A stretch of 64,000 bases of DNA from Macrostomum lignano (GCA_002269645.1 NIVC01002823.1:62001-126000), one strand, 5' to 3'. Positions 7,224 to 61,000 are shown, counted from the first letter of the stretch. Translations and numbers: made by a program. The notes: generated by a model from the letters alone, not told the origin.

Positions 7224-7979
7224 CATGAATAGCCAGTGAGGCAGCTAATTAATTTTAGGTGACCTATGATGAGCTAGGGGCTGCGACGGACCGAGAGAGG
7301 GCGACGAAGGGAGCAATAAAAGAGTCCACGGCAATAACAAGGACTTCGATCGATAGAGCCGGGAAATGAGAAGCAGAAAAATAACCTTGGCGTCAGGAAT
7401 TGATTAAGAAATTTGCCCAAGAATTGCTCTCCAGTCTGCTTTGCTTCCTTTTTGCTTGCCTCCAGAGCCAGAAAATATTTCCTGACGCAGGCAGCTCGGG
7501 CCCTCGGTCGAGTAGGCCACTGCAGGACCCGCACTCCATCTTTCTTTCGCAGTAGCTTCTCGCGAGTCATTCAAGCAATGTCCACTCTTTTATTCGCTCT
7601 CTCTCTTCCCTCTCTGGCCAGGGCCGCTTGCACTTCCTCAGTGACTAAAGGAGTAGTAAAAGCGCGAAATAAGGAGACACTCGAGTCTTCCCATGCCCGG
7701 CCTGGTTTTGTGATTTGCCCAAAGGTCCCTTTGCACTCTGAGAGGAGTGAGCGCCAGCAGCTGACTGTGTCTGTGCCTTTGAGTCCCCACTACTAACGAG
7801 AGGCCCAACTCTCAGAAACGACCGCCAGTGTTTGCCGACCATTCAACCGAGATACAGCCTGGATCAGCGCTTTGGCTTCCATCTACTTAGTCAATATTTA
7901 CTAATGGCAAAGCGAGAATGCACTGTCGGAGTAATGCGCCACTCCCTGATCAAAGGAGGACTTACTGCAAGAAGGAAAC

Positions 7980-8205: not shown

Positions 8206-8723
8206 TTCAGGTCAACCACTTTGATGATGAGCTTGCGCAGCGGATTGTCGATGGTCAGGCAGAACAGCACGCGGTTCGGCCGCTTGTCCCGCGGCTCCGT
8301 GCGCACCTGTCTGGCTGCGCCCGCCTTCCGCTGGCTCTGCTGCTGCGCCAGCAGCGCAGTCATCGCCACAGACATCAGGTCGTTCGGCTGGCCGTTGGCT
8401 CCGGTTGCTGATGCACTTTTACTCGCTGCCGCGGCTCCTCCTGCTGTTGCACCTGCTGCTGCTGCTGCTGCTGAGGTGGAGGCGGCCGCGGCTGCATTGC
8501 CGCTGTTGTTAGCAGCTGTACAATGCGGATGGTGCTGGACCCGGTGCTGCTGCTGCGGCTGTTGATTCGGTTTTGTACCAGTTGCTGCACCAGGATTTGA
8601 GTGAGGCTGCTGCTGCTGCGGCTTGATCCCAGCTGTCTGGTTTTGCCTGCGGGCCCGCAGCGCAGCTGCATCAGGCGCATTGGCCGCACTGGCCGGCCTA
8701 TTGTGGTTCGGCCTGGCCTCCAT
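8206..8723 (-). CDS. L-type voltage-gated calcium channel (Cav1) alpha-1 subunit, N-terminal coding exon
   Basis: Q/A-rich N-terminus ending RPNRVLFCLTIDNPLRKLIIKVVDL(K), resembling the Cav1 pre-IS1 motif. Donor AA|gtgag (phase 2) joins the 3459 exon to give [17 protein letters not shown] favours Cav1 over Cav2. Paralogue not assignable. Confidence 0.88.
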
Positions 8724-10326: not shown

Positions 10327-11564
10327 GATGGATTCTCAGCAGGATTGACCCTGCCAATGCAGAGCGAAGTGGCTGCGGCTCATGGGACACAGGAGGGCAG
10401 GCCTGTGCTGCAGGGCCAGCAGCTGAAAGAGTGAATGGATGAACACGGGGGCAGCAGCGGGCATGCATCAATGTCAGGGCTGGAGAGCATTGGAGCCAGT
10501 GAAGTGAGGAGAAGATGAGCCCGAGCGAGCAGAAGAGAGAGATCCGGTTGGGAAGATGGATGGGAAAGGGGAGGAGCTTATTTTTCGAGTAGGCCCGGTC
10601 AAGTCTCTGAGACGGATCAAAGCTCCTCAAACTTCTTCAGCAGCAAGGTTGTTTCGAACCGATCGCATTCGATAGTAGGAGCAGCCTGTGCACTGATTCA
10701 GGCGCGGGCCCAGCGAGCCAACTTCACTACTGTCAGTAGAGCAGGCGAAATATTAATTTAGAGCGAGAATAACAAAAATGTAAAATGGTGCGCCCAGTCA
10801 GCCATCAGCATTCACTCTGGACTTTCCGACTTCCAGACAAGCTTTCAGAGACCGCGGGGGATATTAAACGCGCATATTGTCCAATTTGAAGCTAAAAAGC
10901 CTCCCATAAATTTGGGCTCTGGACCGCCACTCCGTCGCAGGCTGCCGACACCTCCCCGTCCCTCATCGCCGATAGACTAATTAATAATCCGCCAGCATCA
11001 GACCCACATCCTGTCGTTTTCTCCTGTTTTATTCTCTCAAAGCATTTCTGCCCTCCTTCGGCCGATTCCCTGGGGGGTTCGGGAGGGGGAAGATTGCGTG
11101 GTGTTTATACACTGCATTGTCTGGCGGGGTCAAGCAACAATGCAGGTGGGAGGCTGGAGGCTGTCAGTCAGGTAGATTTGCGGCACAATCAGCAGGCGGA
11201 TGGGAATACTGATAAATAGATATTCTTCAAACTAGTGCAATGGCTGGGGTTTTATTATATAATCAATCACCCATTATCGAGTGCAATTACTAAATTTGTA
11301 CCTGTCTATCAGGAAGCTTATCCCGGATTAGTTATTACTAAGCAGTAGCAGCATTTGTACTTTTAATTATATTCTTGTCAGAATTCTGACTACAGCTGAC
11401 AGGATTTAATTAACAGGTTGCAAGTCAGCTGCCGCCACGCTGGATGTTTCATCAGGGAATGCACTGTGAGATCAAACACGACTTCGGATCCCAAGGAGAG
11501 AGAAAATTAATCTTGAATATAAAACTCGCATCGAGCAACCCCAAGCTGACACGAACCATCCAGC

Positions 11565-14500
11565 TCACAATAAGCTACCCCAACTCACATCAAGCTACCC
11601 CAACTCACACCAAGCTACAACCAACTCACAACAAGCTACACCCAACTCACAACAAGCTACACCCAACTCACAACAAGCAACACCCAACTCACAACAAGCT
11701 ACACCCAACTCACAACAAGCTACACCCAACTCACAACAAGTTACACCCAACTCACAAGCTACACCCAACTCACAACAAGCAACACCCAACTCACAAGCTA
11801 CACCCAAATCACAAGCTACACCCAACTCACAACAAGCTACACTCAACTCACAACAACCAACAACCAACTCACAAGCTACACCCAACTCACAACAAGCTAC
11901 ACCCAACTCACAACAAGCTACACCCAACTCACAACAAGCTACACCCAACTCACATGCTACACCCAACTCACAAGCTACAACCAACTCACAAAAAGCTACA
12001 CCCAACTCACAACAAGCTACACCCAACTCACAACAAGCTACACCCAAGTCACATGCTACACCCAACTCACAAGCTACAACCAACTCACAAGCTACACCCA
12101 ACTCACAACAAGCTACACCCAACTCACAACAAGCTACACCCAACTCACAACAAGCTACACCCAACTCACAACAAGCTACACCCAACTCACAACAAGCTAT
12201 ACCCAACTCACAACAAGCTACACCCAACTCACAACAAGCTACACCCAACTAACAACAAGCTACACCCAACTCACAACAAGCTACACCCAACTCACAACAA
12301 GCTACACCCAACTCACAACAAGCTACATCCAACTCACAACAAGCTACACCCAACTCACAACAAGCTACACCCAACTCACAACAAGCTACACCCAACTCAC
12401 AACAAGCTACACCCAACTCACAACAAGCTATACCCAACTCACAACAAGCTACACCCAACTCACAACAAGCTACACCCAACTAACAACAAGCTACACCCAA
12501 CTCACAACAAGCTACACCCAACTCACAACAAGCTACACCCAACTCACAGCAAGCTACACCCAACTCACAACAAGCTACATCCAACTCACAACAAGCTACA
12601 CCCAACTCACAAGCTACACCCAAATCACAAGCTACACCCAACTCACAACAAGCTACACTCAACTCACAACAACCAACAACCAACTCACAAGCTACACCCA
12701 ACTCACAACAAGCTACACCCAACTCACAACAAGCTACACCCAACTCACAACAAGCTACACCCAACTCACATGCTACACCCAACTCACAAGCTACAACCAA
12801 CTCACAAAAAGCTACACCCAACTCACAACAAGCTACACCCAACTCACAACAAGCTACACCCAAGTCACATGCTACACCCAACTCACAAGCTACAACCAAC
12901 TCACAAGCTACACCCAACTCACAACAAGCTACACCCAACTCACAACAAGCTACACCCAACTCACAACAAGCTACACCCAACTCACAACAAGCTACACCCA
13001 ACTCACAACAAGCTATACCCAACTCACAACAAGCTACACCCAACTCACAACAAGCTACACCCAACTAACAACAAGCTACACCCAACTCACAACAAGCTAC
13101 ACCCAACTCACAACAAGCTACACCCAACTCACAACAAGCTACATCCAACTCACAACAAGCTACACCCAACTCACAACAAGCTACACCCAACTCACAACAA
13201 GCTACACCCAACTCACAACAAGCTACACCCAACTCACAACAAGCTATACCCAACTCACAACAAGCTACACCCAACTCACAACAAGCTACACCCAACTAAC
13301 AACAAGCTACACCCAACTCACAACAAGCTACACCCAACTCACAACAAGCTACACCTAACTCACAGCAAGCTACACCCAACTCACAACAAGCTACACCCAA
13401 CTCACAACTAGCTACACCCAACTAACAACAAGCTACACCCAACTCACAACAAGCTACATCCAACTCACAACAAGCAACACCCAACTCACAACAAGCTACA
13501 CCCAACTCACAACAAGCTACACCCAACTCACAACAAGCTACACCCAACTCACAACAAGCTACACCCAACTCACAACAAGCTACACCCAACTCACAACAAG
13601 CTACACCCAACTCACAACAAGCTACACCCAACTCACAAAAAGCTACACCCAACTCACAACAAGCTACACCCAACTAACAACAAGCTACACTCAACTCACA
13701 AGCTACACCCAACTCACAAAAAGCTACACCCAACTCACAACAAGCTACACCCAACTCACAACAAGCTACACTCAACTCACAAGCTACACCCAACTCACAA
13801 AAAGCTACACCCAACTCACAACAAGCTACACCCAACTCACAACAAGCTACACCCAACTCACAACAAGCTACACCCAACTCACAACAAGCTACACCCAACT
13901 CACAACAAGCTACACCCAACTCACAACAAGCTACACCCAACTCACAGCAAGCTACACCCAACTCACAACAAGCTACACCCAACTAACAACAAGCTACACC
14001 CAACTCACAACAAGCTACATCCAACTCACAACAAGCAACACCCAACTCACAACAAGCTACACCCAACTCACAACAAGCTACACCCAACTCACAACAAGCT
14101 ACACCCAACTCACAGCAAGCTACACCCAACTCACAACAAGCTACACCCAACTCACAACAAGCTACACCCAACTAACAACAAGCTACACCCAACTCACAAC
14201 AAGCTACATCCAACTCACAACAAGCAACACCCAACTCACAACAAGCTACACCCAACTCACAACAAGCTACACCCAACTCACAACAAGCTACACCCAACTC
14301 ACAACAAGCTACACCCAACTAACAACAAGCTACACCCAACTCACAACAAGCTACACCCAACTCACAACAAGCTACACCCAACTCACAACAAGAAACAACC
14401 AACTCACAAGCTACACCCAACTCACAACAAGCTACACCCAACTCACAACAAGCTACATCCAACTCACAACAAGCTACACCCAACTCACAACAAGCTACAC

Positions 14501-17500
14501 CCAACTCACAACAAGCAACACCCAACTCACAACAAGCTACACCCAACTCACAACAAGCTACACCCAACTCACAACAAGATACACCCAACTCACAACAAGC
14601 TACACCCAACTAACAACAAGCTACACCCAACTCACAACAAGCTACACCCAACTCACAACAAGCTACACCCAACTCACAACAAGCTACACCCAACTCACAA
14701 CAAGCTACACCCAACTCACAACAAGCTAAACCCAACTCACAACAAGCTACACCCAACTCACAACAAGCTACACCCAACTCACAACAAGCTACACCCAACT
14801 CACAACAAGCTACACCCAACTCACAACAAGCTATACCCAACTCACAACAAGCTACACCCAACTCACAACAAGCTACACCCAACTCACAACAAGCTACACC
14901 CAACTCACAACAAGCTACACCCAACTCACAACAAGCTACACCCAACTCACAACAAGCTATACCCAACTCACAACAAGCTATACCCAACTCACAACAAGCT
15001 ACACCCAACTCACAACAAGCTACACCCAACTCACAACAAGCTACACCCAACTCACAACAAGCTACACCCAACTCACAACAAGCTACACCCAACTCACAAC
15101 AAGCTACACCCAACTCACAACAAGCTACACCCAACTCACAACAAGCTATACCCAACTCACAACAAGCTACACCCAACTCACAACAAGCTACACCCAACTC
15201 ACAACAAGCTACACCCAACTCACAACAAGCTACACTCAACTCACAACAAGCTACACCCAACTCACAACAAGCTACACCAACTCACAACAAGCTACACCCA
15301 ACTCACAACAAGCTACACCCAACTCACAACAAGCTACACCCAACTCACAACAAGCTACACCCAACTCACAACAAGCTACACCAACTCACAACAAGCTACA
15401 CCCAACTCACAACAAGCTACACCAACTCACAACAAGCTACACCCAACTCACAACAAGCTACACCCAACTCACAACAAGCTACACCCAACTCACAACAAGC
15501 TACACCCAACTCACAACAAGCTACACCCAACTCACAACAAGCTACACCCAACTCACAACAAGCTACACCAACTCACAACAAGCTACACCCAACTCACAAC
15601 AAGCTACACCCAACTCACAACAAGCTACACCCAACTCACAACAAGCTACACCCAACTCACAACAAGCTACACCCAACTCACAACAAGCTACACCCAACTC
15701 ACAACAAGCTACACCCAACTCACAACAAGCTACACCCAACTCACAACAAGCTACACCCAACTCACAACAAGCTACACCCAACTCACAACAAGCTACACCC
15801 AACTCACAACAAGCTACACCCAACTCACAACAAGCTACACCCAACTCACAACAAGCTACATCCAACTCACAACAAGCTACACCCAACTCACAACAAGCTA
15901 CACCCAACTCACAACAAGCTACACCCAACTCACAACAAGCTACACCCAACTCACAACAAGCTACACCCAACTCACAACAAGCTACACCCAACTCACAACA
16001 AGCTACACCCAACTCACAACAAGCTACACCCAACTCACAACAAGCTACACCCAACTCACAACAAGCTACACCCAACTCACAACAAGCTACACCCAACTCA
16101 CAACAAGCTACACCCAACTCACAACAAGCTACACCCAACTCACAACAAGCTACACCCAACTCACAACAAGCTACACCCAACTCACAACAAGCTACACCCA
16201 ACTCACAACAAGCTACACCCAACTCACAACAAGCTACACCCAACTCACAACAAGCTACACCCAACTCACAACAAGCTACATCCCAACTCACAACAAGCTA
16301 CACCCAACTCACAACAAGCTACACCCAACTCACAACAAGCTAACACCCAACTCACAACAAGCTACACCCAACTCACAACAAGCTACACCCAACTCACAAC
16401 AAGCTACACCCAACTCACAACAAGCTACACCCAACTCACAACAAGCTACACCCAACTCACAACAAGCTACACCCAACTCACAACAAGCTACACCCAACTC
16501 ACAACAAGCTACACCCAACTCACAACAAGCTACACCCAACTCACAACAAGCTACACCCAACTCACAACAAGCTACACCCAACTCACAACAAGCTACACCC
16601 AACTCACAACAAGCTACACCCAACTCACAACAAGCTACACCCAACTCACAACAAGCTACACCCAACTCACAACAAGCTATACCCAACTCACAACAAGCTA
16701 CACCCAACTCACAACAAGCTACACCCAACTCACAACAAGCTACACCCAACTCACAACAAGCTACACCCAACTCACAACAAGCTACACCCAACTCACAACA
16801 AGCTACACCCAACTCACAACAAGCTACACCCAACTCACAACAAGCTACACCCAACTCACAACAAGCTACACCCAACTCACAACAAGCTACACCCAACTCA
16901 CAACAAGCTACACCCAACTCACAACAAGCTACACCCAACTCACAACAAGCTACACCCAACTCACAACAAGCTACACCAACTCACAACAAGCTACACCCAA
17001 CTCACAACAAGCTACACCCAACTCACAACAAGCTACACCCAACTCACAACAAGCTACACCCAACTCACAACAAGCTACACCCAACTCACAACAAGCTACA
17101 CCCAACTCACAACAAGCTACACCCAACTCACAACAAGCTACACCCAACTCACAACAAGCTACACCCAACTCACAACAAGCTACACCCAACTCACAACAAG
17201 CTACACCCAACTCACAACAAGCTACACCCAACTCACAACAAGCTACACCCAACTCACAACAAGCTACACCCAACTCACAACAAGCTACACCCAACTCACA
17301 ACAAGCTACACCCAACTCACAACAAGCTACACCCAACTCACAACAAGCTACACCCAACTCACAACAAGCTACACCCAACTCACAACAAGCTACACCCAAC
17401 TCACAACAAGCTACACCCAACTCACAACAAGCTACACCCAACTCACAACAAGCTACACCCAACTCACAACAAGCTACACCCAACTCACAACAAGCTACAC

Positions 17501-18063
17501 CCAACTCACAACAAGCTACACCCAACTCACAACAAGCTACACCCAACTCACAACAAGCTACACCCAACTCACAACAAGCTACACCCAACTCACAACAAGC
17601 TACACCAACTCACAACAAGCTACACCCAACTCACAACAAGCTACACCCAACTCACAACAAGCTACACCCAACTCACAACAAGCTACACCCAACTCACAAC
17701 AAGCTACACCCAACTCACAACAAGCTACACCCAACTCACAACAAGCTACACCCAACTCACAACAAGCTACACCCAACTCACAACAAGCTACACCCAACTC
17801 ACAAGCTACACCCAACTCACAACAAGCTACACCCAACTCACAACAAGCTACACCCAACTCACAACAAGCTACACCCAACTCACAACAAGCTACACCCAAC
17901 TCACAACAAGCTACACCCAACTCACAACAAGCTACACCCAACTCACAACAAGCTACACCCAACTCACAACAAGCTACACCCAACTAACAACAAGCTACAC
18001 CCAACTCACAACAAGCTACACCCAACTCACAACAAGCTACACCCAACTAACAACAAGCTACAC
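11565..18063. repeat. 21-bp satellite, about 6.5 kb (about 310 units)
   Basis: Unit caactcacaacaagctacacc, with 18-bp deletion variants and point variants. Confidence 0.99.
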
Positions 18064-18626
18064 CTGGCTCAAACCGAGTTATTCAAACAATCTCAGCAAG
18101 TCTTACTGATCAGGGACAGTTCTATTTATAGCAACTTCATCCTCAGCTTCTCTGCTGCACTTATCAAAACTCAGCGTCTGTTTATTCAGCTGCAGCTCGA
18201 GATGGTGGCAGGAGCGCAGCCATGATGTCTGTCTAAGCCCAAGGAGCATGCAACGCCTGGCAGCTTTTCTGTCCTACAAGTCTTCCGGCTCCTAGATATC
18301 AACCGCTAATCCGGAAGGCTTTGCGATCTCGACTGCGCTTCGTCTCTAGAGCAGGTGAGTACCTCAGTTTCGCAGCCAGGTAGCTCCTGTAGACCCATTT
18401 ATCAGAGGCGGGGGCCGCGTGCACCCTGGCGCACTGCACTTTAAGCGACATTGTCACACAACCGGCGAGAGGCATTACTGCCGCCCATTCCGCCGACTCC
18501 CCAGAGCAGCGCGCGGATGCGTACGCAGTCATACGCACTGGTAGGTAGCTGGGTATGTACACTTCTCTGTGCCGTTAATTGCACGAGCAGAGCCAAGCCG
18601 AGATTCCAGTTTAGCTCCAAATTAAT

Positions 18627-25121: not shown

Positions 25122-25160
<39 letters not shown>
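25122..25160. repeat. (TG)n microsatellite, left flank of the DNA element
   Basis: Direct observation. Confidence 0.97.
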
Positions 25161-25164
<4 letters not shown>

Positions 25165-25165
25165 G

Positions 25166-28100
25166 CACGGGGCATTTGTTGGGCCATACGCATACAACGG
25201 GACCCGCACTGTTGGGCCAAAAAAATGTTGGGACTGTCCCATCAAGTCCGTCCAACACTTCCAAAAAACTTACAATAGCAGCTCAAAAAAATACTCTATG
25301 GATTCAGCTCGACAGCCTCTTTTTGATGGTGCAACTCATTTTTAATAATTTTACTTGCTGTGTCAATAAATAAGCAAAAACTGGCGTCCCAATAAGGAAA
25401 AATGATACAAAATTCGACCAAATCACTATTGGGACACTGAAATGGCTAATCTGCTCCCGCATATTTTTATTGGTTTTTTCTCATATTTTTACTAATAGTA
25501 GATTTCAAGCGCATTCATTTGCTGCAGTCTTTGTTTCAAGACGTAAATACATAGCATACATTAAAATACATACAAAGCAAAGCATAGCAAAACACTTTTA
25601 AGGGTATTTTATTGTCAAAGGATGGTTCTGGATGGAGATAAACCTAAAGAAATGACAAGGGCTTACATGTACTTCTGACTGTGATGGGCATCAGTACTCT
25701 ACACGAACTAAATTGTTAGGACAGTGTTGCAGTGTTGAATACAACAGCCCACTCTTGTTAGGACTCATGCTATTGACTGCTGCGCGCATTCGATATTCTA
25801 TAAATTGTTGGGACTGTGTGCTAGAGTGTCGTTTACAAAAGCCCACTCATATTAGGACTTACCCCGTACATGTTAGGACTAAGCCCTACCCCCCTGTGTA
25901 CATGGCTCCAATTTACCAGAGTCCCCTTGCTATTTAAGTGTACATTTATTTTGGTCTATTATTGACGCCACCCCGCAAACGTACGGTAAACAAAATTGGC
26001 ATGTACTCGCCATGCTGAAATCAATGGTCAACTCTGCCTCTGCCATGGCACCCGAGTCACCATGGTATGGAAAGAACAGCATGGAATGGCACAGCGATAA
26101 ACATGTAAGTGGTATTAAAAAACTTTGTCGGAAACAAGAAGCATTTATATTTAAATGCTATAAAAATACTGCTCCTGCTAAGCAGTACCTACCTTTACTT
26201 CAGGTATATCACCTTTGATCAACTGCCATGTGGCGCAATTGTCAAAGGATCCGTCGACTTTAACCGGTAAGCTGTAAAAGCTTTGAGTAAAACTTGACAT
26301 TTCGTCTGAATCCATTGACATTCAATAGCCTACGTGTCCAACCACAAAAATTATAAGTTTTGTACTTTTAACTCTCAGATCGGGTCTTAGCAGATTCTAT
26401 AGTTATGCATGCAAGGGCCCCTCAGAAGAGATGCTTAAACACTGCAGTGCATTTTTCCTAGCAATTATTGGGACACGAAGTGTTGGGCCACTGTGTGTGT
26501 GTCTAGTTTTTTCCGCATTTGTTAAGTCACCTAAAGAACTCAATTAATAAAGGGCTCCAGAACAAATTGATGGGCAAACGGATGACACACTGCACAGAGA
26601 CTTGTTGGGACAGATTAAAAACAGCTTATTTTAGAATGGGTACACTTTACTAAAGTAGAATGCTCCTATAGAAAGCTGCAAGCAAACTAGCATCTTCTGG
26701 AGCTGACATGCAGAGAAGAATGATTTTGTCGTCCTTGAAATCACTAAATCGATATGCGAAATCGATCTTTTGCTAATCCCACCACAGGTTCCAGTGAAAA
26801 GAAGAAACGAAACCCATTGACTAAATTGGCAGTCGACTCAATCGATGCCGACTGCAACTGACCTGTCAGCTTCGAACTCAGGAGAGCAGCTAATAGACTA
26901 CGAGAGTAATGCTAGATGCCAGAATGCTTCACAGCATCAAAGTCTTAAGCAGAAGCTTCAATGAAAGGTTAGTTCATGCTGTGGCTGCATTCGTTTTCGT
27001 GTCTAGAAGCGTTATAACTTTTTGTACTTTTAACTCTCAGATCGGGTCTTAGCAGATTCTATAGCTATGCATGCAAGGGCCCCTCAGAAGAGATGCTTAA
27101 ACACTGCAGTGCATTTTTCCTAGCAATTATTGGGACACGAAGTGTTGGGCCACTGTGTGTGTGTCTAGTTTTTTCCGCATTTGTTAAGTCACCTAAAGAA
27201 CTCAATTAATAAAGGGCTCCAGAACAAATTGATGGGCAAACGGATGACACACTGCACAGAGACTTGTTGGGACAGATTAAAAAACAGCTTATTTTAGAAT
27301 GGGTATACTTTACTAAAGTAGAATGCTCCTATAGAAAGCTGCAAGCAAACTAGCATCTTCTGGAGCTGACATGCAGAGAAGAATGATTTTGTCGTCCTTG
27401 AAATCACTAAACAGATATGCGAAATCGATCTTTTGCTAATCCCACCACAGGTTCCAGTGAAAAGAAGAAACGAAACCCATTGACTAAATTGGCAGTCGAC
27501 TCAATCGATGCCGACTGCAACTGACCTGTCAGCTTCGAACTCAGGAGAGCAGCTAATAGACTACGAGAGTAATGCTAGATGCCAGAATGCTTCACAGCAT
27601 CAAAGTCTTAAGCAGAAGCTTCAATGAAAGGTTAGTTCATGCTGTGGCTGCATTCGTTTTCGTGTCTAGAAGCGTTATAACTTTTTGTACTTTTAACTCT
27701 CAGATCGGGTCTTAGCAGATTCTATAGCTATGCATGCAAGGGCCCCTCAGAAGAGATGCTTAAACACTGCAGTGCATTTTTCCTAGCAATTATTGGGACA
27801 CGAAGTGTTGGGCCACTGTGTGTGTGTCTAGTTTTTTCCGCATTTGTTAAGTCACCTAAAGAACTCAATTAATAAAGGGCTCCAGAACAAATTGATGGGC
27901 AAACGGATGACACACTGCACAGAGACTTGTTGGGACAGATTAAAAAACAGCTTATTTTAGAATGGGTACACTTTACTAAAGTAGAATGCTCCTATAGAAA
28001 GCTGCAAGCAAACTAGCATCTTCTGGAGCTGACATGCAGAGAAGAATGATTTTGTCGTCCTTGAAATCACTAAATCGATATGCGAAATCGATCTTTTGCT

Positions 28101-30754
28101 AATCCCACCACAGGTTCCAGTGAAAAGAAGAAACGAAACCCATTGACTAAATTGGCAGTCGACTCAATCGATGCCGACTGCAACTGACCTGTCAGCTTCG
28201 AACTCAGGAGAGCAGCTAATAGACTACGAGAGTAATGCTAGATGCCAGAATGCTTCACAGCATCAAAGTCTTAAGCAGAAGCTTCAATGAAAGGTTAGTT
28301 CATGCTGTGGCTGCATTCGTTTTCGTGTCTAGAAGCGTTATAACTTTTTGTACTTTTAACTCTCAGATCGGGTCTTAGCAGATTCTATAGCTATGCATGC
28401 AAGGGCCCCTCAGAAGAGATGCTTAAACACTGCAGTGCATTTTTCCTAGCAATTATTGGGACACGAAGTGTTGGGCCACTGTGTGTGTGTCTAGTTTTTT
28501 CCGCATTTGTTAAGTCACCTAAAGAACTCAATTAATAAAGGGCTCCAGAACAAATTGATGGGCAAACGGATGACACACTGCACAGAGACTTGTTGGGACA
28601 GATTAAAAACAGCTTATTTTAGAATGGGTACACTTTACTAAAGTAGAATGCTCCTACAGAAAGCTGCAAGCAAACTAGCATCTTCTGGAGCTGACATGCA
28701 GAGAAGAATGATTTTGTCGTCCTTGAAATCACTAAATCGATATGCGAAATCGATCTTTTGCTAATCCCACCACAGGTTCCAGTGAAAAGAAGAAACGAAA
28801 CCCATTGACTAAATTGGCAGTCGACTCAATCGATGCCGACTGCAACTGACCTGTCAGCTTCGAACTCAGGAGAGCAGCTAATAGACTACGAGAGTAATGC
28901 TAGATGCCAGAATGCTTCACAGCATCAAAGTCTTAAGCAGAAGCTTCAATGAAAGGTTAGTTCATGCTGTGGCTGCATTCGTTTTCGTGTCTAGAAGCGT
29001 TATAACTTTTTGTACTTTTAACTCTCAGATCGGGTCTTAGCAGATTCTATAGCTATGCATGCAAGGGCCCCTCAGAAGAGATGCTTAAACACTGCAGTGC
29101 ATTTTTCCTAGCAATTATTGGGACACGAAGTGTTGGGCCACTGTGTGTGTGTCTAGTTTTTTCCGCATTTGTTAAGTCACCTAAAGAACTCAATTAATAA
29201 AGGGCTCCAGAACAAATTGATGGGCAAACGGATGACACACTGCACAGAGACTTGTTGGGACAGATTAAAAACAGCTTATTTTAGAATGGGTACACTTTAC
29301 TAAAGTAGAATGCTCCTATAGAAAGCTGCAAGCAAACTAGCATCTTCTGGAGCTGACATGCAGAGAAGAATGATTTTGTCGTCCTTGAAATCACTAAATC
29401 GATATGCGAAATCGATCTTTTGCTAATCCCACCACAGGTTCCAGTGAAAAGAAGAAACGAAACCCATTGACTAAATTGGCAGTCGACTCAATCGATGCCG
29501 ACTGCAACTGACCTGTCAGCTTCGAACTCAGGAGAGCAGCTAATAGACTACGAGAGTAATGCTAGATGCCAGAATGCTTCACAGCATCAAAGTCTTAAGC
29601 AGAAGCTTCAATGAAAGGTTAGTTCATGCTGTGGCTGCATTCGTTTTCGTGTCTAGAAGCGTTATAACTTTTTGTACTTTTAACTCTCAGATCGGGTCTT
29701 AGCAGATTCTATAGCTATGCATGCAAGGGCCCCTCAGAAGAGATGCTTAAACACTGCAGTGCATTTTTCCTAGCAATTATTGGGACACGAAGTGTTGGGC
29801 CACTGTGTGTGTGTCTAGTTTTTTCCGCATTTGTTAAGTCACCTAAAGAACTCAATTAATAAAGGGCTCCAGAACAAATTGATGGGCAAACGGATGACAC
29901 ACTGCACAGAGACTTGTTGGGACAGATTAAAAACAGCTTATTTTAGAATGGGTACACTTTACTAAAGTAGAATGCTCCTATAGAAAGCTGCAAGCAAACT
30001 AGCATCTTCTGGAGCTGACATGCAGAGAAGAATGATTTCGTCGTCCTTGAAATCACTAAATCGATATGCGAAATCGATCTTTTGCTAATCCCACCACAGG
30101 TTCCAGTGAAAAGAAGAAACGAAACCCATTGACTAAATTGGCAGTCGACTCAATCGATGCCGACTGCAACTGACCTGTCAGCTTCGAACTCAGGAGAGCA
30201 GCTAATAGACTACGAGAGTAATGCTAGATGCCAGAGTGCTCTAAATAACGAGACTCCTGTTTTCTCACTCGACCGGAATTTGTTGTTTAATCTGCTTAAC
30301 TAATCTCTGCGTTTCAGTTTTTCAGTTTCACTGTCAATTTCAGGTTTTTTTCTAAGCGCAAGTGTAATTGAATTCTTTATTCATATTAGTCAGGCATATT
30401 GCGTACAGCATTATAGCGTATTAGTTAAGGTAAAGGTAAATAGACTGCTTGTAACTAGTTTTTCCTTCATGTGGATTGGCTTTAACGAAGCCTTTTGTAT
30501 TTCAAGTAATGCTGAATTCGCTGGACTGAGGACAATATAGTTACACGATGATATGCTATTCCTTCACTTTCAATAGATCATACTATTAGTATGGGACGTG
30601 CTTTTTTATTTCAATGTATGCTTTTTTTCATCATTTAAATGCTAAAAATACTTAATAGGTCATTGCACTGTGTGTATGTGTGTGTTTTCGTGTGTCAAAA
30701 AAAATTGCAAAATAAGTGCCCACCATTGTATACCGTACCAACAAGTGCCCGGTG
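25166..30754. mobile_element. Non-autonomous TIR DNA transposon, CMC (CACTA/EnSpm)-like, 5.6 kb
   Basis: Left end CACGGGGCATTTGTTGG vs reverse complement of right end CACCGGGCACTTGTTGG (15/17), with further similarity TACG..ATACAA.GG. CG immediately outside both ends. Many subterminal TGTT(G/A)GG(A/C)C motifs. No transposase ORF. Confidence 0.72.
26351..30234. repeat. 662-663-bp tandem array, about 5.9 nearly identical copies
   Basis: Marker cgggtcttag at 26381, 27043, 27706, 28369, 29031, 29693. Confidence 0.99.
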
Positions 30755-30757
30755 CGT

Positions 30758-30760
<3 letters not shown>

Positions 30761-30801
<41 letters not shown>
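30761..30801. repeat. (TG)n microsatellite, right flank of the DNA element
   Basis: Direct observation. Confidence 0.97.
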
Positions 30802-30803
<2 letters not shown>

Positions 30804-33335: not shown

Positions 33336-35553
33336 GATGGAGCTTCTCCTTGATCTATAATTCCCCTGCACATCACTTCCTTTTTCGACCTTCAAATGTA
33401 CCTGAACTCGTATGTTACTATGATAGCTTCTAGCGGTACTCGTACACAAGACGCGCATTTCGAACAGAAAGTTCCTCAGCTGATAAAGTAAACAAATGAA
33501 TTGCAGATAATTTGATAATTATCAAGCGATTTATCCCAAATCAAACCTCCCCCCCCAGATGCCATCCGGCATAGACTGTATGAGAATCGAATTTCCACCT
33601 GCCGCCGTGCAAAGAGTGATTAATGACTGATTGGCCGGCCTCTTATCTGTTGCGCATCATCTGCGACTGCCCTGCTTGTACGAAAGCCAGCTTTCTGCTT
33701 GGCGTTGGTTGCCTCAGTTTCTTCCCACGGGCCTCTGAATTCCCCCCCCCCCGCTCCGAAAGCTCTCTTACGAGCGTAGTAGACTATTTTAAAGTTTCAA
33801 AGGACCCGAGGTTCGGATTGAGAGGCTTCGCGGGCCGGAGTTTGCCGACCCCTGATCTAGGAAAACTTTTAGATCAATTTAGGACAAATCTGCGGTTTAG
33901 ACAGAATTTCTATTGACCCTTCTGTGGGCGCATCATGGGGGCGCCATCGTGAGGGCGCCAGCATCAAGGGCGCTACAGCTGCTTCAAAAGGGGGCACCTA
34001 ATAGCAGGGGGTGGGGACGCCATAGTTCTCCAGCCGCTGGAAAAAGCGCATATCAGATACTTACTCTGGCTATTTAAAATTCGGAGGTTCGCAATTTATT
34101 TTGCAGCGAAAACCACCCGGCCTGTAACAGCTTGCGCCCTCCTATACTTAAGCTGTCCATAGGAAATGCAGGTAACGCCGCTTGTGAACTGGCTATACAA
34201 AAGGTGCATGCAAATCAGGGGACAGATAAGATTTTTTGCCTAACAACGCCGGGACAGTCAGTGCAGTTCCAGAAGATCCCCCATGACGCATCCCCGTGCA
34301 TTTTCTTTCATGATCACAAGCGCCGCGGGGTCTCCACATAAACGAATATAGATAGATCTCCTAACATCCCAGTCTGTTCCAAGTCGCACTGCAATCACCT
34401 GCCGGGGGGAGAGTCCGGGTGAGAGTGGAAGATAGGGGAAAATTGGAAGTGGCGGCCTGGTGCAGGCATGCATTATCCTCGGTCATTAACATCGCACTGA
34501 CGGCACCGAAGATCCAACAGGCTGCGCCATCTCATCTCCTTGAATGAGGTCCTACAGCAGGTTGCAAGTGTGCGACATTTCGGTCGCCTAGGGCAAGGAT
34601 TTGCAAATGTGAAAAGGACAAAGAGCATTGGATCGGACAGCCATTGGTAAATACCGTTTTATCAGCGCATTAATCAAGTCACGGATATGGCTTCATCATT
34701 TTATCGTTTTTACCGAAAGTTTTCTCGTCTAAAATTTGTGTTTCTTCAATTAAGTACAGTATAATAGTAGCCCTTCGCTGGAATTGGCTTGGTTATAGTG
34801 GTATTGTAAACAACCGAAGCCGCAGTACACCCTGAGTGAGTGCGTACGCATCCGTGTACAGCGAAATGACCATGACAGACCACGCAGGCTGCAGGCGGAC
34901 TGTCGCCGTGATGTGGGGCTCGTGTCCAAAGCTACGGTGATAACGGTGATGCACCCTCTAGTTTAAGTCTCCATTGTTTATTCCGTGCGATTCTGACTAC
35001 TGCAAGTAGGTCAGTGTAAACAAGTGTATGGCACTTGCACTTGACGTCTTAAGTTGCAGTCTTGCAGTTGACGTCTTAGACTGGCTCCGCCAACAAAGTA
35101 GAATAATAAGGCTAATAAGTCTGACACCATATAACACTTTATAGGTTCCAGAAAAAGGGCACAATGCATTAATAAGCGCAGCCTGTCGAGACACAAAAAT
35201 GTGCCAGAAAAAGCGTTCTCTGTAATTGCAACAATCATCTTTTGAAAGTAGAAAATTGTGGAAAAACTTCAACAAGAAAAAAAGATCTGGTTTAAACTAA
35301 TGCAAGACTATTAATATTGCCACTGCTATATTAAACAGTTAAAAAAAATGCGCAAAACAGCGCTTGGACCTGTAGCAGGAAGAGAACTGGGGGTTGAAAA
35401 AATCCAGTTGAAGATAACAAATGCGGAATTGATAAATAGATTCCGAACAAAACGAAGCATACAGTTCGCGGCAATTCAAACAGATGTTGTGTCAACGTGC
35501 GGCTCACTCAGCTTCAGTTTGCAAGATAAGACAACAACAATCAGCCCAACGGA

Positions 35554-36981
35554 TCAATAGTAGCGACCCTGCTTGGCGGCAGCGGCAGAGTTGGGCGGCT
35601 CCGGACTGCGGCTTCGCTTGCTGGCAGCGGCGACGACAGCGGCACGGGGCGGCGGGTTCATTGGCTTGCGGAACACGTCCTGGATGCCGCCACTGCTGCT
35701 GCTGCCGCCGCCGCCGGCGCCTCCGCCGCCGCGGCCGTGTGGAGGCTGCATCAGCGGCTGAGGCGATGGCGAGCGCGAGCTGACCGACTGGCGAAGGTAA
35801 TCAGCGGTTGGCGAGCCCAGCTGCCACAGATAGTCTGACCGCGCCGGCGACGGCGGCCGAAGCGGCGGCGGTGGTGGCGGCGATAGGCGCCGTTTCTGCT
35901 GCTTTCTCAGCCGGCGCAGCATGAGGAACTCCTCCAGCCGGCGGGCGTCCTCGTCGGTGATGTCGTCCTCGCTGGCCGGGTCCTCGCCGATGCCATCATT
36001 ATCTTCGTCGCTGTAGGCCTCGTAGCGAGTCTCAAATTCGTGGCGATTGCGCGGGCGGCGCGACGAGTCGCACAAGCTGACGGAGCCCGACGGCAGCCGG
36101 CGGTCGTGCTGGCGCTCGTAGTCGCGGCCAGAGCTCGAAGGATAGCCGGGTCCGCTGTCGCCAACAGCTCGGCGGTGGCGATGGCTGCGGCGGCGTTGGC
36201 CAGAGCCGCTGCTGTCCCAACGCGAATTTCTGGCCTCGGCTGCTGGCACCGGAGGCATCAAAGTGATGGCGCTGGCGCCGCTAGACTCGGCTCGGCCGGT
36301 CCGATAGTCGCTACGGCGCTTGAACACCCGATCCAGGTGGTGCGCGTTGGCCGATTTAAACAAATTATACGAATGGCCAGGCGAAACCAGGTGACCAGCG
36401 CCGGCCGTGCTGACTGGCCGCCTAGAGCTGGCGCGGCGCTGCTCATCCGGCGGCGAGTGAGTCGAATAGCGACGCAGCGAATTGGCGGACCGGTGCGGCG
36501 CCCGGCCGCTTCTGCCGCTGTGCGGGTCGAATGCAAACTGCTCAGGCGGACTGAGCGGACTCTCCTGGCGGAGCTTGTCCAGGTACACAATCGAGCTGGT
36601 AGGACTCGAGCCAAGCGAGTCTGGCGCGTCTGGCAGGTCCCGATACTGGCTGAGCTGGGAATCCCGCTTGAGCGCGACCATCGAGTTGGCGCTGCCGCCG
36701 CCTGCCTGCGCTGCCGAGGCTGCCATCTTGGCCTCATCATTATATGGCGGCAGTGAATGTTTGCCCATCCAGCGGCGCATGTCCCGCAGGAACACGTCCA
36801 GATCGCCGCCGTGCGATGGGGCCAAGGGCCTGTAAGAAGAGGCCGACCGCCTCACCAGCTGCTGCTGCCTGTCGCTGCCTTGGGCATCGAAGGCGAGGTC
36901 AGCCAGGGAAGCGCGGTGACGCAGAGTCCTGTCCTCATCGCTCAAATGCTGAGGAGCTGGCAATTTGCTTGAGCTTGACAT
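35554..36981 (-). CDS. Uncharacterised 475-aa S/P/R-rich, probably disordered protein; single coding exon
   Basis: Long non-repetitive GC-rich ORF against an AT-rich upstream flank; aaaATG context; acidic patch followed by basic helix (DEDARRLEEFLMLRRLRKQQKRR). No domain recognised. Confidence 0.75.
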   Translation of the reverse strand: MSSSSKLPAPQHLSDEDRTLRHRASLADLAFDAQGSDRQQQLVRRSASSYRPLAPSHGGDLDVFLRDMRRWMGKHSLPPYNDEAKMAASAAQAGGGSANSMVALKRDSQLSQYRDLPDAPDSLGSSPTSSIVYLDKLRQESPLSPPEQFAFDPHSGRSGRAPHRSANSLRRYSTHSPPDEQRRASSRRPVSTAGAGHLVSPGHSYNLFKSANAHHLDRVFKRRSDYRTGRAESSGASAITLMPPVPAAEARNSRWDSSGSGQRRRSHRHRRAVGDSGPGYPSSSGRDYERQHDRRLPSGSVSLCDSSRRPRNRHEFETRYEAYSDEDNDGIGEDPASEDDITDEDARRLEEFLMLRRLRKQQKRRLSPPPPPPLRPPSPARSDYLWQLGSPTADYLRQSVSSRSPSPQPLMQPPHGRGGGGAGGGGSSSSGGIQDVFRKPMNPPPRAAVVAAASKRSRSPEPPNSAAAAKQGRYY

Positions 36982-40222: not shown

Positions 40223-42097
40223 GCCATCTGTGTTGAGCGGCTGGTGCTGGATCTGCTTGGCTACCAGTGGACGGGCTGCATCTTCGACTTCGCCACTCTC
40301 CTCAGCTGCCTGTTCGCCGTGGCAGCCGTCTGCCAGCTGCGGCCGGGCTTCTGCTACGCTGTTGGCGCCTGGCTGCTGGCCTGGCTCGGCTGGAACGCCT
40401 TCCTGATCTGCTTCTACCTGGACGTCGACGGCCTGCAGGAGCGGGCGGCCAGCGTGCTGCACTGGGGCACTGGCAAGACCAGCTACTGGCGAAAGCTGCT
40501 GATTGGCTGCTCAGATTATCGGCTGCAGCTGCGGCTTCCGGTTGCGTTGCTAGGCAACCAGAATAACGGCACAGATAGTTCCGCTTTGTGGTGCCTGGTG
40601 GATTATCGAACAGCCGAGCTGCTGCACTGCGCAGCGGGGGGCGGCGCCGCCCTGCTCAGCATCCTGCTGCTCTGCTGCCTCGCCTGCCAGCTGCGCGAGG
40701 AGCTGCGCAAATTCGAACGGCCCGGCGGCCCCGCCTCCGCCTACCTGCCCGTGTCGGCCAACTCCAGCTTTGTGAAGATCCGGCCAGGCCGCCGGATGAT
40801 GCGCCGGCCCGGCGACCACCCCGAGGCCAGCCTGTCCGACGCCGCCGCGGCCGCGGCTGCCGCCAGCTACGCCGACAATTCGCTGGGCCGCCGCTCGGCC
40901 GGCAGTCGTCGGAGCAGCGTCATGCGCGACCCCCTGCCCTGGGTTGAGCTTCAGGTGACCGGCGCGCCGCCGCAACAGCAGCAGCCGCCGCCACTGCGAG
41001 TCAACAGCGACGAGGGAGAGGCCAGCGAGTTCATCGACGACGCCCGGCCGCCGCCCTACACGGCCGGGTCCAATTACCCGCGGCACCGGCCGCCGCAGCA
41101 GCAGGCGAGAAGGCGGCACCGCAGCGCCGGCAGCAGCGGCCGCAAGCGCAAAAGTCGCAGGCGGGCAGCGGCGGCTCCTCAAGCGGCGCCAACTGGCGCT
41201 GGCGCCGCCGTTAGTCTCACCGCTGCGTCGATTCCTCGGCCATCGTCGGCTATTGGTTTCCATGACAACCTGGCCTACGCTAGGGACGATGAACTAGATG
41301 ATCCACCGCCGCCTCCTCCGCCGCCTGTTCAGCAGCTGCCGAAGCTGCCACAGTTCAATCCGACAGCCGGCGGCGGCGGAGTCGTGAACCGGACCTTCCG
41401 CCTGTCCTCCGAGTCCGTGCCTGGCGGCCCAGCCACGCCCTACGCGTCTGGCGCCGCTCCGATCTTCCGGCAGCAGCAGCAGCCGCCGTTTGCCCAGCTG
41501 GGCGATGACGAAGAATTTCCGCCGCCTCCGTCTCCGGCGCTGTTCCAGCCGCCGGTGTCTCAGCCGCCCCCGCCGCCGACTCAGCAGCAGCAACAGCAGC
41601 AGCCAACTGGGACTTCGGCTCAGCAGCGGCTGTTCAGCCCTCAGCAGCAGCAGCAGCACAGCATTCACAGGCCATTGCGCAATCAGCAGCCCGCCGCCGC
41701 CGCTGTTTCGAGTTCCCGCAGTCGAGCTCCCATCTCACCCGATGCAGCGTTTTCAGGCCTCGACCAGCTTGACGGCGGCGACGCCAGGCTGAGCACCCGC
41801 GGCCAGCAGCAGCCGCCGCCGCACCTCAGCCGCTCCTCTGCCGAGCAGAAGCCAATCTTTGTCAGCACGAGAAGCGAGGCGGCCGCGGCTGCGGCTGTTG
41901 CGGCTGCTGCCGCTTCGGCATCTTCCACTGCCGCAGTTGGCGGGCCAGCCTTTGGTCACGTGACCTCGCCTCGGGCCAGCCTGCCTCGCCATCCGTCATA
42001 TCGAAGCGCCACGTCTCCAGGAGTCGGAGGCGGCGGCGGCGGAGGAGATGCAGGAGTTTTTATCGGAGGCGTTCACGGCAGCTCTGTGCTCATCTGA
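40223..42097 (+). CDS. NKAIN: Na+/K+-ATPase beta-interacting (NKAIN) protein, exon 2, with a long P/Q/A-rich C-terminal tail
   Basis: Acceptor cccag|GCC. VERLVLDLLGYQW, WNAFLICFYLDVDGL, SYWRKLLIGC and CLVDY..ELLH resemble remembered NKAIN motifs (ERQIFDFLGYQW, WNVFIICFYLEVGGL). Confidence 0.88.
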   Translation, partial: AICVERLVLDLLGYQWTGCIFDFATLLSCLFAVAAVCQLRPGFCYAVGAWLLAWLGWNAFLICFYLDVDGLQERAASVLHWGTGKTSYWRKLLIGCSDYRLQLRLPVALLGNQNNGTDSSALWCLVDYRTAELLHCAAGGGAALLSILLLCCLACQLREELRKFERPGGPASAYLPVSANSSFVKIRPGRRMMRRPGDHPEASLSDAAAAAAAASYADNSLGRRSAGSRRSSVMRDPLPWVELQVTGAPPQQQQPPPLRVNSDEGEASEFIDDARPPPYTAGSNYPRHRPPQQQARRRHRSAGSSGRKRKSRRRAAAAPQAAPTGAGAAVSLTAASIPRPSSAIGFHDNLAYARDDELDDPPPPPPPPVQQLPKLPQFNPTAGGGGVVNRTFRLSSESVPGGPATPYASGAAPIFRQQQQPPFAQLGDDEEFPPPPSPALFQPPVSQPPPPPTQQQQQQQPTGTSAQQRLFSPQQQQQHSIHRPLRNQQPAAAAVSSSRSRAPISPDAAFSGLDQLDGGDARLSTRGQQQPPPHLSRSSAEQKPIFVSTRSEAAAAAAVAAAAASASSTAAVGGPAFGHVTSPRASLPRHPSYRSATSPGVGGGGGGGDAGVFIGGVHGSSVLI

Positions 42098-48687: not shown

Positions 48688-49336
<649 letters not shown>

Positions 49337-54407: not shown

Positions 54408-54415
54408 CGTTTGAA

Positions 54416-54460
<45 letters not shown>

Positions 54461-60331: not shown

Positions 60332-60339
60332 GTATGTTA

Positions 60340-61000
<661 letters not shown>

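What the first reader, a model, noticed from the sequence alone, without database searches (positions are those of the whole stretch)
25166..30754. CAC...GTG transposon inserted in a (TG)n microsatellite and carrying a six-unit 662-bp array
Seen: 17-bp TIRs (15/17), CG on both outer sides, and (TG)n tracts on the same strand on both flanks, so the empty site reads (TG)n-TTTG-CG-TGAT-(TG)n. Known: CMC (CACTA/Mirage/Chapaev) elements have CAC-like termini, 2-4-bp TSDs and subterminal repeats. A 5-bp Transib-type TSD is absent. Inference: a non-autonomous family that may target TG microsatellites and carries its own macrosatellite.
Basis: partly seen in the sequence, partly recalled or inferred. 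Interest (0 to 1): 0.75.

Follow-up and report, generated by a model that had tools for sequence, protein, structure and literature searches.

The report
Non-autonomous transposon inside TG microsatellite
A 5.6-kb protein-less DNA transposon carrying its own tandem array sits inside a (TG)n microsatellite of the flatworm Macrostomum lignano and is missing from two sister copies of the locus, so it is a real mobile element of an ordinary kind, but the claimed 2-bp CG duplication, CMC family and microsatellite targeting remain unproven.

Summary
The sequence features are confirmed, and the picture is sharper. The window is Macrostomum lignano contig NIVC01002823.1. At 25166-30754 lies a 5,589-bp element with no ORFs. 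It is bounded by 15/17 inverted repeats, or 17/19 if the palindromic CG is counted. It holds 19 same-strand copies of a TKTTRGGMC motif and a 5.87-unit array of 661-663 bp. The units differ at only 10 alignment columns, and each holds three motifs and a TIR-like core.

Two sister copies of the locus in the same assembly lack the whole segment. They read uninterrupted (TG)34 and (TG)44. This is therefore a genuine insertion, private to this contig, into a TG microsatellite, which is the only such tract in the 64 kb.

The 5-6 non-TG bases on each side are absent from both sister loci, and one of those has no substitution in 1,060 bp of flank. The 2-bp CG duplication is therefore unproven. Three readings fit as well or better:
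- a 19-bp repeat with a 6-bp TGTTTG/TGATTG duplication;
- true ends lying outside the repeat;
- repair-mediated copying from another TG-flanked copy.

CMC membership rests only on CAC...GTG termini. No transposase partner or second copy could be reached. TG targeting rests on one insertion. This is an ordinary kind of element of modest interest.

The parts
25122..25160 (+). Left half of the target microsatellite, (TG)19 plus T
   Evidence: TRF, period 2, 19.5 copies, 100% matches. Continuous with the right half in sister loci L003 (TG)34 and L004 (TG)44.
25161..25165 (+). Left junction bases TTGCG (the T at 25160 is ambiguous). They are not TG repeat and are absent from both empty sites.
25166..25182 (+). 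5' terminal inverted repeat CACGGGGCATTTGTTGG. It extends to 25164 (CGCAC...) if CG is counted.
   Evidence: (I1, 19 nt, 89%).
25166..26350 (+). 5' arm, 1,185 bp. It carries seven plus-strand copies of T[GT]TT[GA]GG[AC]C, about three looser copies (two of them on the minus strand), and a 59-bp internal direct repeat. It has no coding potential.
26351..30240 (+). Tandem array of 5.87 units of 661-663 bp. Each unit holds ATTATTGGGAC, GTGTTGGGCC, CTTGTTGGGAC and a TIR-like core GCATTTGTTAAG.
30241..30754 (+). 3' arm, 514 bp, AT-rich. It has no motif copies except the one in the terminal repeat, and it contains an imperfect TG-rich stretch around 30667-30697.
30738..30754 (-). 3' terminal inverted repeat CACCGGGCACTTGTTGG (read on the minus strand). 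It extends to 30756 if CG is counted.
30755..30760 (+). Right junction bases CGTGAT. They are not TG repeat and are absent from both empty sites.
30761..30802 (+). Right half of the target microsatellite, (TG)21
   Evidence: TRF, period 2, 21 copies, 100% matches.

Best explanation
The segment is a non-autonomous class II (cut-and-paste type) DNA transposon of Macrostomum lignano. It entered an intergenic (TG)n microsatellite in only one of the three homeologous copies of this locus.

Shown:
- The whole block between the two TG runs (25160/61-30760) is extra DNA relative to two sister loci.
- Its limits coincide to within 5-6 bp with a 17-19-bp inverted repeat.
- It encodes nothing.
- It is packed with one short motif (TKTTRGGMC) that also forms the inner half of both terminal repeats.

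Inferred mechanism:
- A transposase supplied in trans by an autonomous relative binds the motif in the termini and subterminal region, pairs the ends, cuts at or near the CAC/GTG ends and integrates the element.
- The 662-bp array arose inside the element by unequal exchange or replication slippage of a segment that itself looks like a degenerate 5' end. Each unit has a TIR-like core plus three motifs, which triples the number of potential binding sites.
- The superfamily is most likely CMC-like (about 0.35-0.4), on the strength of the CAC...GTG termini and subterminal repeats only.

The size of the target duplication cannot be read at this copy. The non-TG bases at both junctions most likely came in with the inserted DNA or arose at insertion, rather than pre-existing in the target.
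For: - Organism and locus: with PMC5730564 (accession NIVC01).
- Insertion versus empty sites: the window's left flank aligns up to 25163 and its right flank from 30752 in both L003 and L004. Those loci read gattcgctc-(TG)34-gatgaag and gattcgctc-(TG)44-gatgaag.
- Flanks against L004: 0 mismatches in 482+578 bp. Against L003: 96.5-96.9% identity. The insertion is therefore private to the window contig.
- The three copies match the three subgenomes described for this assembly (PMC10733133).
- Terminal repeats.
- Motif: 19 copies on the plus strand, none on the minus strand and none elsewhere in 64 kb. A TIR-like core occurs in every unit.
- No coding capacity: no ORF of 50 aa or more in the array, no Pfam hit in six-frame pieces, and no protein relative among 5.8 billion clusters.
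- No Rfam family.
- Literature on CMC hallmarks: CAC/GTG termini with short duplications (PMC4079192) and CA..TG termini with 2-5-bp duplications (PMC12730594).
Against: - Only one copy is available, so multi-copy status, consistent termini and a transposase partner are all unverified.
- The motif is strongly one-sided. The 3' arm has only the copy inside the terminal repeat, which is unusual for a symmetric two-end binding model.
- The 5-6 junction bases on each side are not explained by a simple staggered-cut insertion into the pure TG tract seen in the sister loci.
- The terminal 11 bases do not match the Chapaev3 termini printed in PMC4079192's supplement (CACTGTGTAA...).
Confidence: 0.85

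Rival explanations
1. This is a CAC...GTG element of the CMC group with a 2-bp CG target duplication, and the pre-insertion allele was an interrupted microsatellite (TG)19-TT-TG-CG-TG-AT-(TG)21.
For: CG is present on both sides. The chance of a 2-bp match is 1/16. The termini are CAC/GTG. Duplications of 2 bp occur in the CMC/CMCT group (PMC12730594). Removing the element and one CG leaves the TG phase intact.
Against: Both sister loci are uninterrupted TG. The model needs four base changes within 10 bp of the target, while the 1,060 bp of immediate flank shows none against L004. CG is palindromic and may simply extend the inverted repeat to 19 bp.
Confidence: 0.2
2. The element is CGCAC...GTGCG (19-bp repeat, 17/19) and made a 6-bp duplication, TGTTTG on the left (25158-25163) and TGATTG on the right (30757-30762). 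The target would be a TG tract with a single G>T interruption, followed by one later T>A change. A 6-bp duplication would point away from CMC.
For: The two hexamers match 5/6 and share the one derived base (T at position 4) that departs from the TG repeat. This model needs two substitutions instead of four. The 19-bp repeat is what the repeat finder reports.
Against: In a TG context four of the six positions match for free, so the evidence is a single shared base. The model still needs two substitutions where the flanks show none against L004. Both sister loci lack the G>T interruption.
Confidence: 0.15
3. The copy did not arrive here by transposase-mediated integration. A break in the TG tract was repaired either by copying from another TG-flanked copy of the element, with the TG runs acting as homology arms, or by end-joining capture of an excised element with a few extra bases. 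The odd junction bases are then the donor's flanks or filler.
For: This explains pure TG in the sister loci with non-TG bases only next to the element, at no cost in substitutions. About 40 bp of perfect repeat lies on each side. The species readily integrates foreign DNA by host repair pathways (PMC5730564).
Against: There is no donor copy in hand. The symmetric CG...CG next to the repeat would be a 1/16 coincidence under the filler version. The homology version only moves the question of the original insertion to another locus.
Confidence: 0.15
4. The element is older than it looks. It was present in the ancestor of two or all three homeologs, and the 'empty' sites are secondary deletions made by recombination or single-strand annealing between the two flanking TG runs. 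That process would also erase the interrupted bases.
For: Two ~40-bp direct repeats flank the element. Such a deletion would leave exactly one pure TG tract. Long indels are very common between the subgenomes (PMC10733133).
Against: The flank identities give the tree (L003,(L004,window)). That requires two independent losses, or one gain plus one very recent loss, against a single gain. The array units are still over 99% identical.
Confidence: 0.08
5. It is an assembly artefact. A TG-flanked element from elsewhere was spliced into this locus through the microsatellite, or the array copy number is wrong.
For: The assembly is known to be difficult and partly chimeric (36% of assembly length lies in chimeric scaffolds, PMC10733133). 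Both joins lie in a simple repeat.
Against: It needs two chimeric joins that return to the same locus in the same orientation and repeat phase. The flanks on both sides are collinear with two sister contigs.
Confidence: 0.03

Closest known systems
Non-autonomous elements of the CMC group (Chapaev-Mirage-CACTA/EnSpm)
   Same: It has 5'-CAC...GTG-3' termini, short terminal inverted repeats and many subterminal copies of a short motif, as in plant CACTA elements (my own knowledge). A 2-bp flanking repeat is possible. CMC hallmarks are given in PMC4079192 (CAC/GTG, 3-4 bp duplication for Chapaev) and PMC12730594 (CA..TG, 2-5 bp for the wider CMCT clade).
   Different: The duplication is not verifiable here. 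No transposase partner is known. The first 11 bases do not match the Chapaev3 termini seen in PMC4079192's supplement. The motif is nearly all on one arm.
Transib
   Same: The termini begin with CAC.
   Different: No 5-bp direct repeat abuts the CAC/GTG ends (TTGCG versus CGTGA). Beyond CAC the terminus does not resemble the CACAGTG-like heptamer (recalled from memory, not tested against a library).
Dada transposons (PMC3706591)
   Same: Dada elements insert into specific multicopy or repetitive targets, have inverted repeats that lie a few bases inside the true ends, and make 6-7-bp duplications. If the junction bases belong to the element, or the 6-bp model holds, the layout is similar.
   Different: Dada targets small-RNA genes, not microsatellites, and has 7-9-bp subterminal repeats rather than 17-19 bp. 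No Dada transposase was linked here. The resemblance is a lead only.
Microsatellite-specific non-LTR retrotransposons
   Same: They are mobile elements found inside one kind of simple repeat. PMC3706591 states that sequence-specific integration into microsatellites is seen almost exclusively among non-LTR retrotransposons.
   Different: This element has terminal inverted repeats and no poly(A) or reverse-transcriptase features. Specificity is not shown, because there is only one copy.
Transposons that carry or seed internal tandem arrays (MITE-derived satellites, Helentron/DINE-1 central repeats, Drosophila Tetris; my own knowledge)
   Same: It is a non-autonomous element whose interior is a tandem array of near-identical units built from element-derived sequence.
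   Different: The unit here is long (662 bp), and each unit repeats the presumed transposase-binding motif and a TIR-like core. It is not known whether the array exists outside the element as a satellite.

Membership tests
Class II non-autonomous TIR transposon (general) | Terminal inverted repeats at the limits of the mobile segment | tested here: met
   A 15/17 (17/19 with CG) inverted repeat lies within 5-6 bp of the insertion limits defined by two empty sites.
Class II non-autonomous TIR transposon (general) | Presence/absence polymorphism with an intact empty site | tested here: met
   L003 and L004 lack the segment and carry one continuous (TG)n.
Class II non-autonomous TIR transposon (general) | No transposase of its own | tested here: met
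   No ORF of 50 aa or more in the array. No Pfam hit. No protein relatives.
Class II non-autonomous TIR transposon (general) | Multiple dispersed copies with the same termini | not testable with these tools
   There is no second copy in the window or the sister loci. The M. lignano genome cannot be searched by DNA here. Metagenome and viral scans gave only single chance hits.
CMC (Chapaev-Mirage-CACTA) | Termini 5'-CAC ... GTG-3' | tested here: met
   CACGGGG...CCCGGTG. This holds only if the ends are at the inverted repeat. If CG or the junction bases belong to the element, the outermost bases differ.
CMC (Chapaev-Mirage-CACTA) | Target site duplication of 2-4 bp | tested here: inconclusive
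   CG is on both sides, but it is palindromic and absent from both pure-TG empty sites. In a dinucleotide repeat the duplication length cannot be read.
CMC (Chapaev-Mirage-CACTA) | Autonomous partner with a DDE transposase carrying the C(2)C and H(3-4)H motifs | not testable with these tools
   The element is non-coding. GenBank proteins of this assembly exclude repeat-overlapping transcripts (PMC5730564), so a partner could not be fetched.
CMC (Chapaev-Mirage-CACTA) | Repbase rule for non-autonomous elements: same duplication length and terminal positions 1-11 matching a classified family with at most 1 mismatch (PMC4455052) | tested here: not met
   This was tested only against the Chapaev3 termini printed in PMC4079192's supplement (CACTGTGTAA..., TWA duplication). 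Only CAC is shared. No Repbase or Dfam library is available here.
Transib | 5-bp target site duplication | tested here: not met
   TTGCG versus CGTGA outside CAC/GTG. With shifted, asymmetric ends, GTTTG/GATTG match 4/5.
Dada | 6-7-bp duplication, inverted repeats subterminal rather than terminal, insertion into one kind of multicopy target | tested here: inconclusive
   A 6-bp TGTTTG/TGATTG (5/6) is possible next to CGCAC/GTGCG. Alternatively the repeat lies 5-6 bp inside the inserted block. No transposase is known, and there is only one copy.
Microsatellite-targeting mobile element | Independent copies recurrently inserted in the same repeat type | not testable with these tools
   There is one copy. 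It lies in the only (TG/CA) tract of 6 units or more in the window (81 of 64,000 bp), which is suggestive but post hoc.

The most novel reading that the evidence does not exclude
The family is a DNA transposon lineage that preferentially enters, or spreads between, (TG)n/(CA)n microsatellites. One route would be a transposase that recognises CAC/GTG ends and treats a CACACA tract as a mimic of those ends. Another would be TG tracts flanking existing copies acting as homology arms for repair-mediated copying into other TG tracts. Sequence-specific integration into simple repeats is so far described almost only for non-LTR retrotransposons (PMC3706591).
Probability: 0.15. Interest if true: 0.6.

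Novelty: new member of a known kind. Interest (0 to 1): 0.3.

Why it matters
- As it stands, this is a clean example of a recent, subgenome-private transposon insertion in the neopolyploid flatworm M. lignano. It can serve as a marker to tell the three homeologous copies apart and as a sign that a TIR family was active after they diverged.
- It also shows why target duplications should not be read from a single copy inside a simple repeat.
- If other copies also sit in TG tracts, this would be a rare DNA transposon with microsatellite specificity, and a possible link between CAC-ended transposases and CA-repeat mimicry of their ends.
- If the 662-bp unit also exists as free arrays, it would document a satellite being born inside a transposon.

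Tried and rejected
1. Other copies in the window: blastn of both arms and one unit found only self hits and TG-rich noise. The TIR pattern and motif were absent from the sister loci.
2. Other copies through proteins: a concatenated six-frame query of 21 stop-free pieces of the element found no protein at E<=0.001. An exact look-up of the 68-aa ORF at 26012-26218 found nothing.
3. Coding remnants: no Pfam hit at E<=1.
4. RNA families: no Rfam hit in the whole window.
5. Public DNA collections:
   - A 20-mer of the TIR had 0 hits in metagenome contigs.
   - The 17-mer gave 12 single hits in viral contigs and more than 120 in metagenome contigs.
   - None of these came as an inverted pair or had motif clusters nearby, and the contexts looked like prokaryotic coding sequence, so they are chance matches.
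6. Other large indels between the homeologs were inspected for the same family. They turned out to be minisatellite length changes, a SINE-like insertion and an unrelated 483-bp segment.
7. Transposase-based search for an autonomous partner:
   - Considered and not run: using a Chapaev3 transposase (PMC4079192 supplement) or the Dada alignment (PMC3706591 supplement) as a query to fish an autonomous partner from M. lignano proteins.
   - Rejected because the GenBank annotation of this assembly excludes transcripts overlapping repeats.
   - I judged the chance of a decisive result to be about 5% per 13-CPU-hour search, whereas a plain BLAST against the assembly would settle it.
8. Readings rejected: Transib (no 5-bp duplication). 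hAT is also rejected because the third base C does not fit the YARNG terminus I recall from memory.
Full report
Origin of the window.
- The 475-aa ORF at 35554-36981(-) is encoded, residue for residue, on NCBI contig NIVC01002823.1 of assembly GCA_002269645.1. Window position equals contig position minus 60,000.
- Its two cluster mates are GenBank proteins named Macrostomum lignano BOX15_Mlig020557g1 and g2.
- NIVC01 is the Mlig_3_7 assembly of this free-living flatworm (PMC5730564).
- More than half of that genome is repetitive, with simple and tandem repeats making up 15%. This fits the 26 tandem-repeat rows found in the window.

Observation check.
- The sequence shows CACGGGGCATTTGTTGG at 25166-25182 and its 15/17 reverse complement at 30738-30754. 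These are the only two matches with up to 3 mismatches in 64 kb, against 0.10 expected.
- The chance of at least 15/17 at two fixed ends is 7e-8.
- CG lies just outside both ends. Because CG is palindromic, the repeat finder reports a 19-nt inverted repeat, CGCACGGGGCATTTGTTGG / CCAACAAGTGCCCGGTGCG, 89% complementary.
- (TG)19.5 (25122-25160) and (TG)21 (30761-30802) flank the element on the same strand.
- The array runs from 26351 to 30240. It has five units of 661-663 bp and one of 579 bp, 98.9-99.5% identical to a reference unit, with ten variable columns in all.

Anatomy.
- The element has a 1,185-bp 5' arm, the 3,890-bp array and a 514-bp 3' arm.
- TGTTGGGMC occurs 16 times in the window, always inside the element and always on the plus strand, against 0.98 expected.
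- The looser T[GT]TT[GA]GG[AC]C gives 19 plus-strand copies, none on the minus strand and none outside the element.
- The motif is the inner half of the 5' terminal repeat. The 3' terminal repeat holds a one-mismatch copy (TGTTGGTAC) in the opposite orientation, and that is the only copy in the 3' arm.
- Each array unit carries three motif copies and a TIR-like core, GCATTTGTTAAG. A unit therefore looks like a degenerate 5' end that was tandemly amplified.
- Nothing is encoded. There is no ORF of 50 aa or more in the array, no Pfam hit in 21 stop-free six-frame pieces, no protein relative and no Rfam family.

Empty sites.
- The two cluster mates of the neighbouring gene lie on contigs NIVC01002813.1 (L003) and NIVC01001441.1 (L004).
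- Both are collinear with the window on both sides of the element. The window's left flank aligns up to 25163 and its right flank from 30752, and the two alignments overlap only within the TG run.
- Read on the window's strand, L003 is ...gattcgctc-(TG)34-gatgaagcag... and L004 is ...gattcgctc-(TG)44-gatgaagcag....
- The whole 5.6-kb block is therefore extra DNA sitting inside one microsatellite.
- Flank identity is 0 mismatches in 482+578 bp against L004 and 96.5-96.9% against L003. This gives the tree (L003,(L004,window)) and makes a single gain on the window's lineage the simplest history.
- Three paralogous copies per locus is what the described S, L1 and L2 subgenomes of this assembly predict (PMC10733133).
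- No gene is called between the element and Mlig020557 in any of the three loci. The site therefore appears to be intergenic, about 4.8 kb from that gene's 3' end.

What the empty sites say about the duplication.
- The filled site reads (TG)19-TT-TG-CG-[CAC...GTG]-CG-TG-AT-(TG)21.
Yet the adjoining 1,060 bp shows none against L004.
- If CG is the outermost pair of the inverted repeat, the adjoining hexamers TGTTTG (25158-25163) and TGATTG (30757-30762) match 5/6 and share the one derived base. That 6-bp model costs two changes.
- A 2-bp TG duplication costs three changes.
- No changes are needed in two cases. In the first, the 5-6 junction bases belong to the inserted DNA, so the true ends lie outside the repeat, as in Dada elements (PMC3706591). 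In the second, the copy was pasted by break repair from another TG-flanked copy or captured with filler.
- Conversely, the sister loci could be secondary deletions by recombination between the two TG runs, which would erase the interruption.
- With one copy in a dinucleotide repeat, these readings cannot be separated. Any even or odd length of TG can pose as a duplication.
- I therefore treat the CG duplication as unproven and, on parsimony, as the least favoured of the classical readings.

Targeting.
- The interrupted tract is the only (TG/CA) run of 6 units or more in the window, 81 of 64,000 bp (0.13%). The sister loci have no other such run either.
- A random insertion would land there about once in 700 trials. 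This is suggestive, but it is post hoc and rests on a single event.
- No second copy could be reached. There is none in the window or sister loci. Scans of metagenome and viral contigs returned only isolated chance matches without partners or motif clusters.
- The M. lignano assembly itself cannot be searched by DNA with these tools. Its GenBank proteins omit repeat-overlapping transcripts.

Mechanism.
- Shown: the element is a lineage-private insertion, bounded by inverted repeats, non-coding and motif-rich.
- Inferred: a transposase supplied in trans binds TKTTRGGMC in the termini and the 5' subterminal region, forms a paired-end complex, cuts at or near CAC/GTG and integrates.
- Inferred: the array arose by unequal exchange or slippage and is young or homogenised, since its units are about 99-100% alike. 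It adds 18 motif sites (12 by the stricter pattern), which could help or hinder mobilisation.
- The one-sided motif distribution is not explained.

Comparison with known families.
- CAC...GTG termini with short duplications are the hallmark of Chapaev and the wider CMC group (PMC4079192). The CMCT clade shares CA..TG termini and 2-5-bp duplications (PMC12730594).
- That, plus subterminal repeats, is all that ties this element to CMC.
- Transib fails the 5-bp duplication test.
- Dada is a structural lead only.
- I file the element as a non-autonomous TIR transposon, probably CMC-like (about 0.35-0.4), not as a proven member.

Verdict.
- This is a real and well-delimited mobile element of an ordinary kind in a transposon-rich genome: a new member of a known kind.
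Its empty-site reconstruction is contradicted, and its family and targeting claims are open.
- Interest is modest (0.3). It would rise if genome-wide copies prove a preference for TG tracts.

Noticed in passing
window 11560-18064: A 6.5-kb minisatellite of 313 copies of a 21-bp unit (CCAACTCACAACAAGCTACAC), 96% matches, with extreme strand asymmetry (GC skew about -0.79, AT skew +0.63). It is one of about 20 distinct tandem arrays in the 64 kb.
   Followed up: no
window 34183-34196; L004 (reverse complement) 8272-8631; same place in L003: A 360-bp segment is present in both sister loci but absent from the window. It is flanked by a roughly 14-bp direct repeat (TGTGAACTGGC.AT) and has a tRNA-like end, so it looks like a SINE-type insertion polymorphism or a precise loss.
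   Followed up: partly
window 33783/33784; L004 (reverse complement) 7374-7856: A 483-bp extra segment found in L004 only. It contains a 33-bp minisatellite (AGATAAAGAATCCAGATCATGGCTGCGGGCC/A) and a purine-rich tail. Its origin is unknown.
   Followed up: no
window 52231-54471 (-), with 54323-54961 (-): A non-LTR retrotransposon remnant: a 746-aa ORF with reverse transcriptase (RVT_1, 1.5e-23) and RNase H (5.4e-11), preceded by an out-of-frame upstream ORF.
   Followed up: partly
window 25122-25160 + 30761-30802; L003 18761-18828; L004 18680-18767: The same microsatellite differs in length in all three homeologs: 40 pure units split in two, then 34 and 44. This holds even between the window and L004, whose immediate flanks show no substitution.
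   Followed up: yes
window 48690-49336 and 60340-61000: (AGT)215 is read as a long poly-serine run inside an ORF. A (CTGC/CTGT)n tract of about 660 bp follows directly after an exon-like ORF (59867-60760) that resembles a B9-domain ciliary protein. That resemblance is from reading the translation and was not searched.
   Followed up: no
window 40244-42097 (+) and 35554-36981 (-): Neighbouring genes: an NKAIN-family gene (PF05640) and the low-complexity 475-aa protein Mlig020557. The latter exists in three copies of at least 90% identity on three contigs, which served as anchors for the sister loci.
   Followed up: yes
window 30667-30697 and once per array unit (e.g. 26490-26503): Short imperfect TG runs lie inside the element itself: CACTGTGTGTATGTGTGTGTTTTCGTGTGTC in the 3' arm, and ACTGTGTGTGTGTC right after the TGTTGGGCC motif in each unit. 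It is not known whether they relate to the TG target.
   Followed up: no
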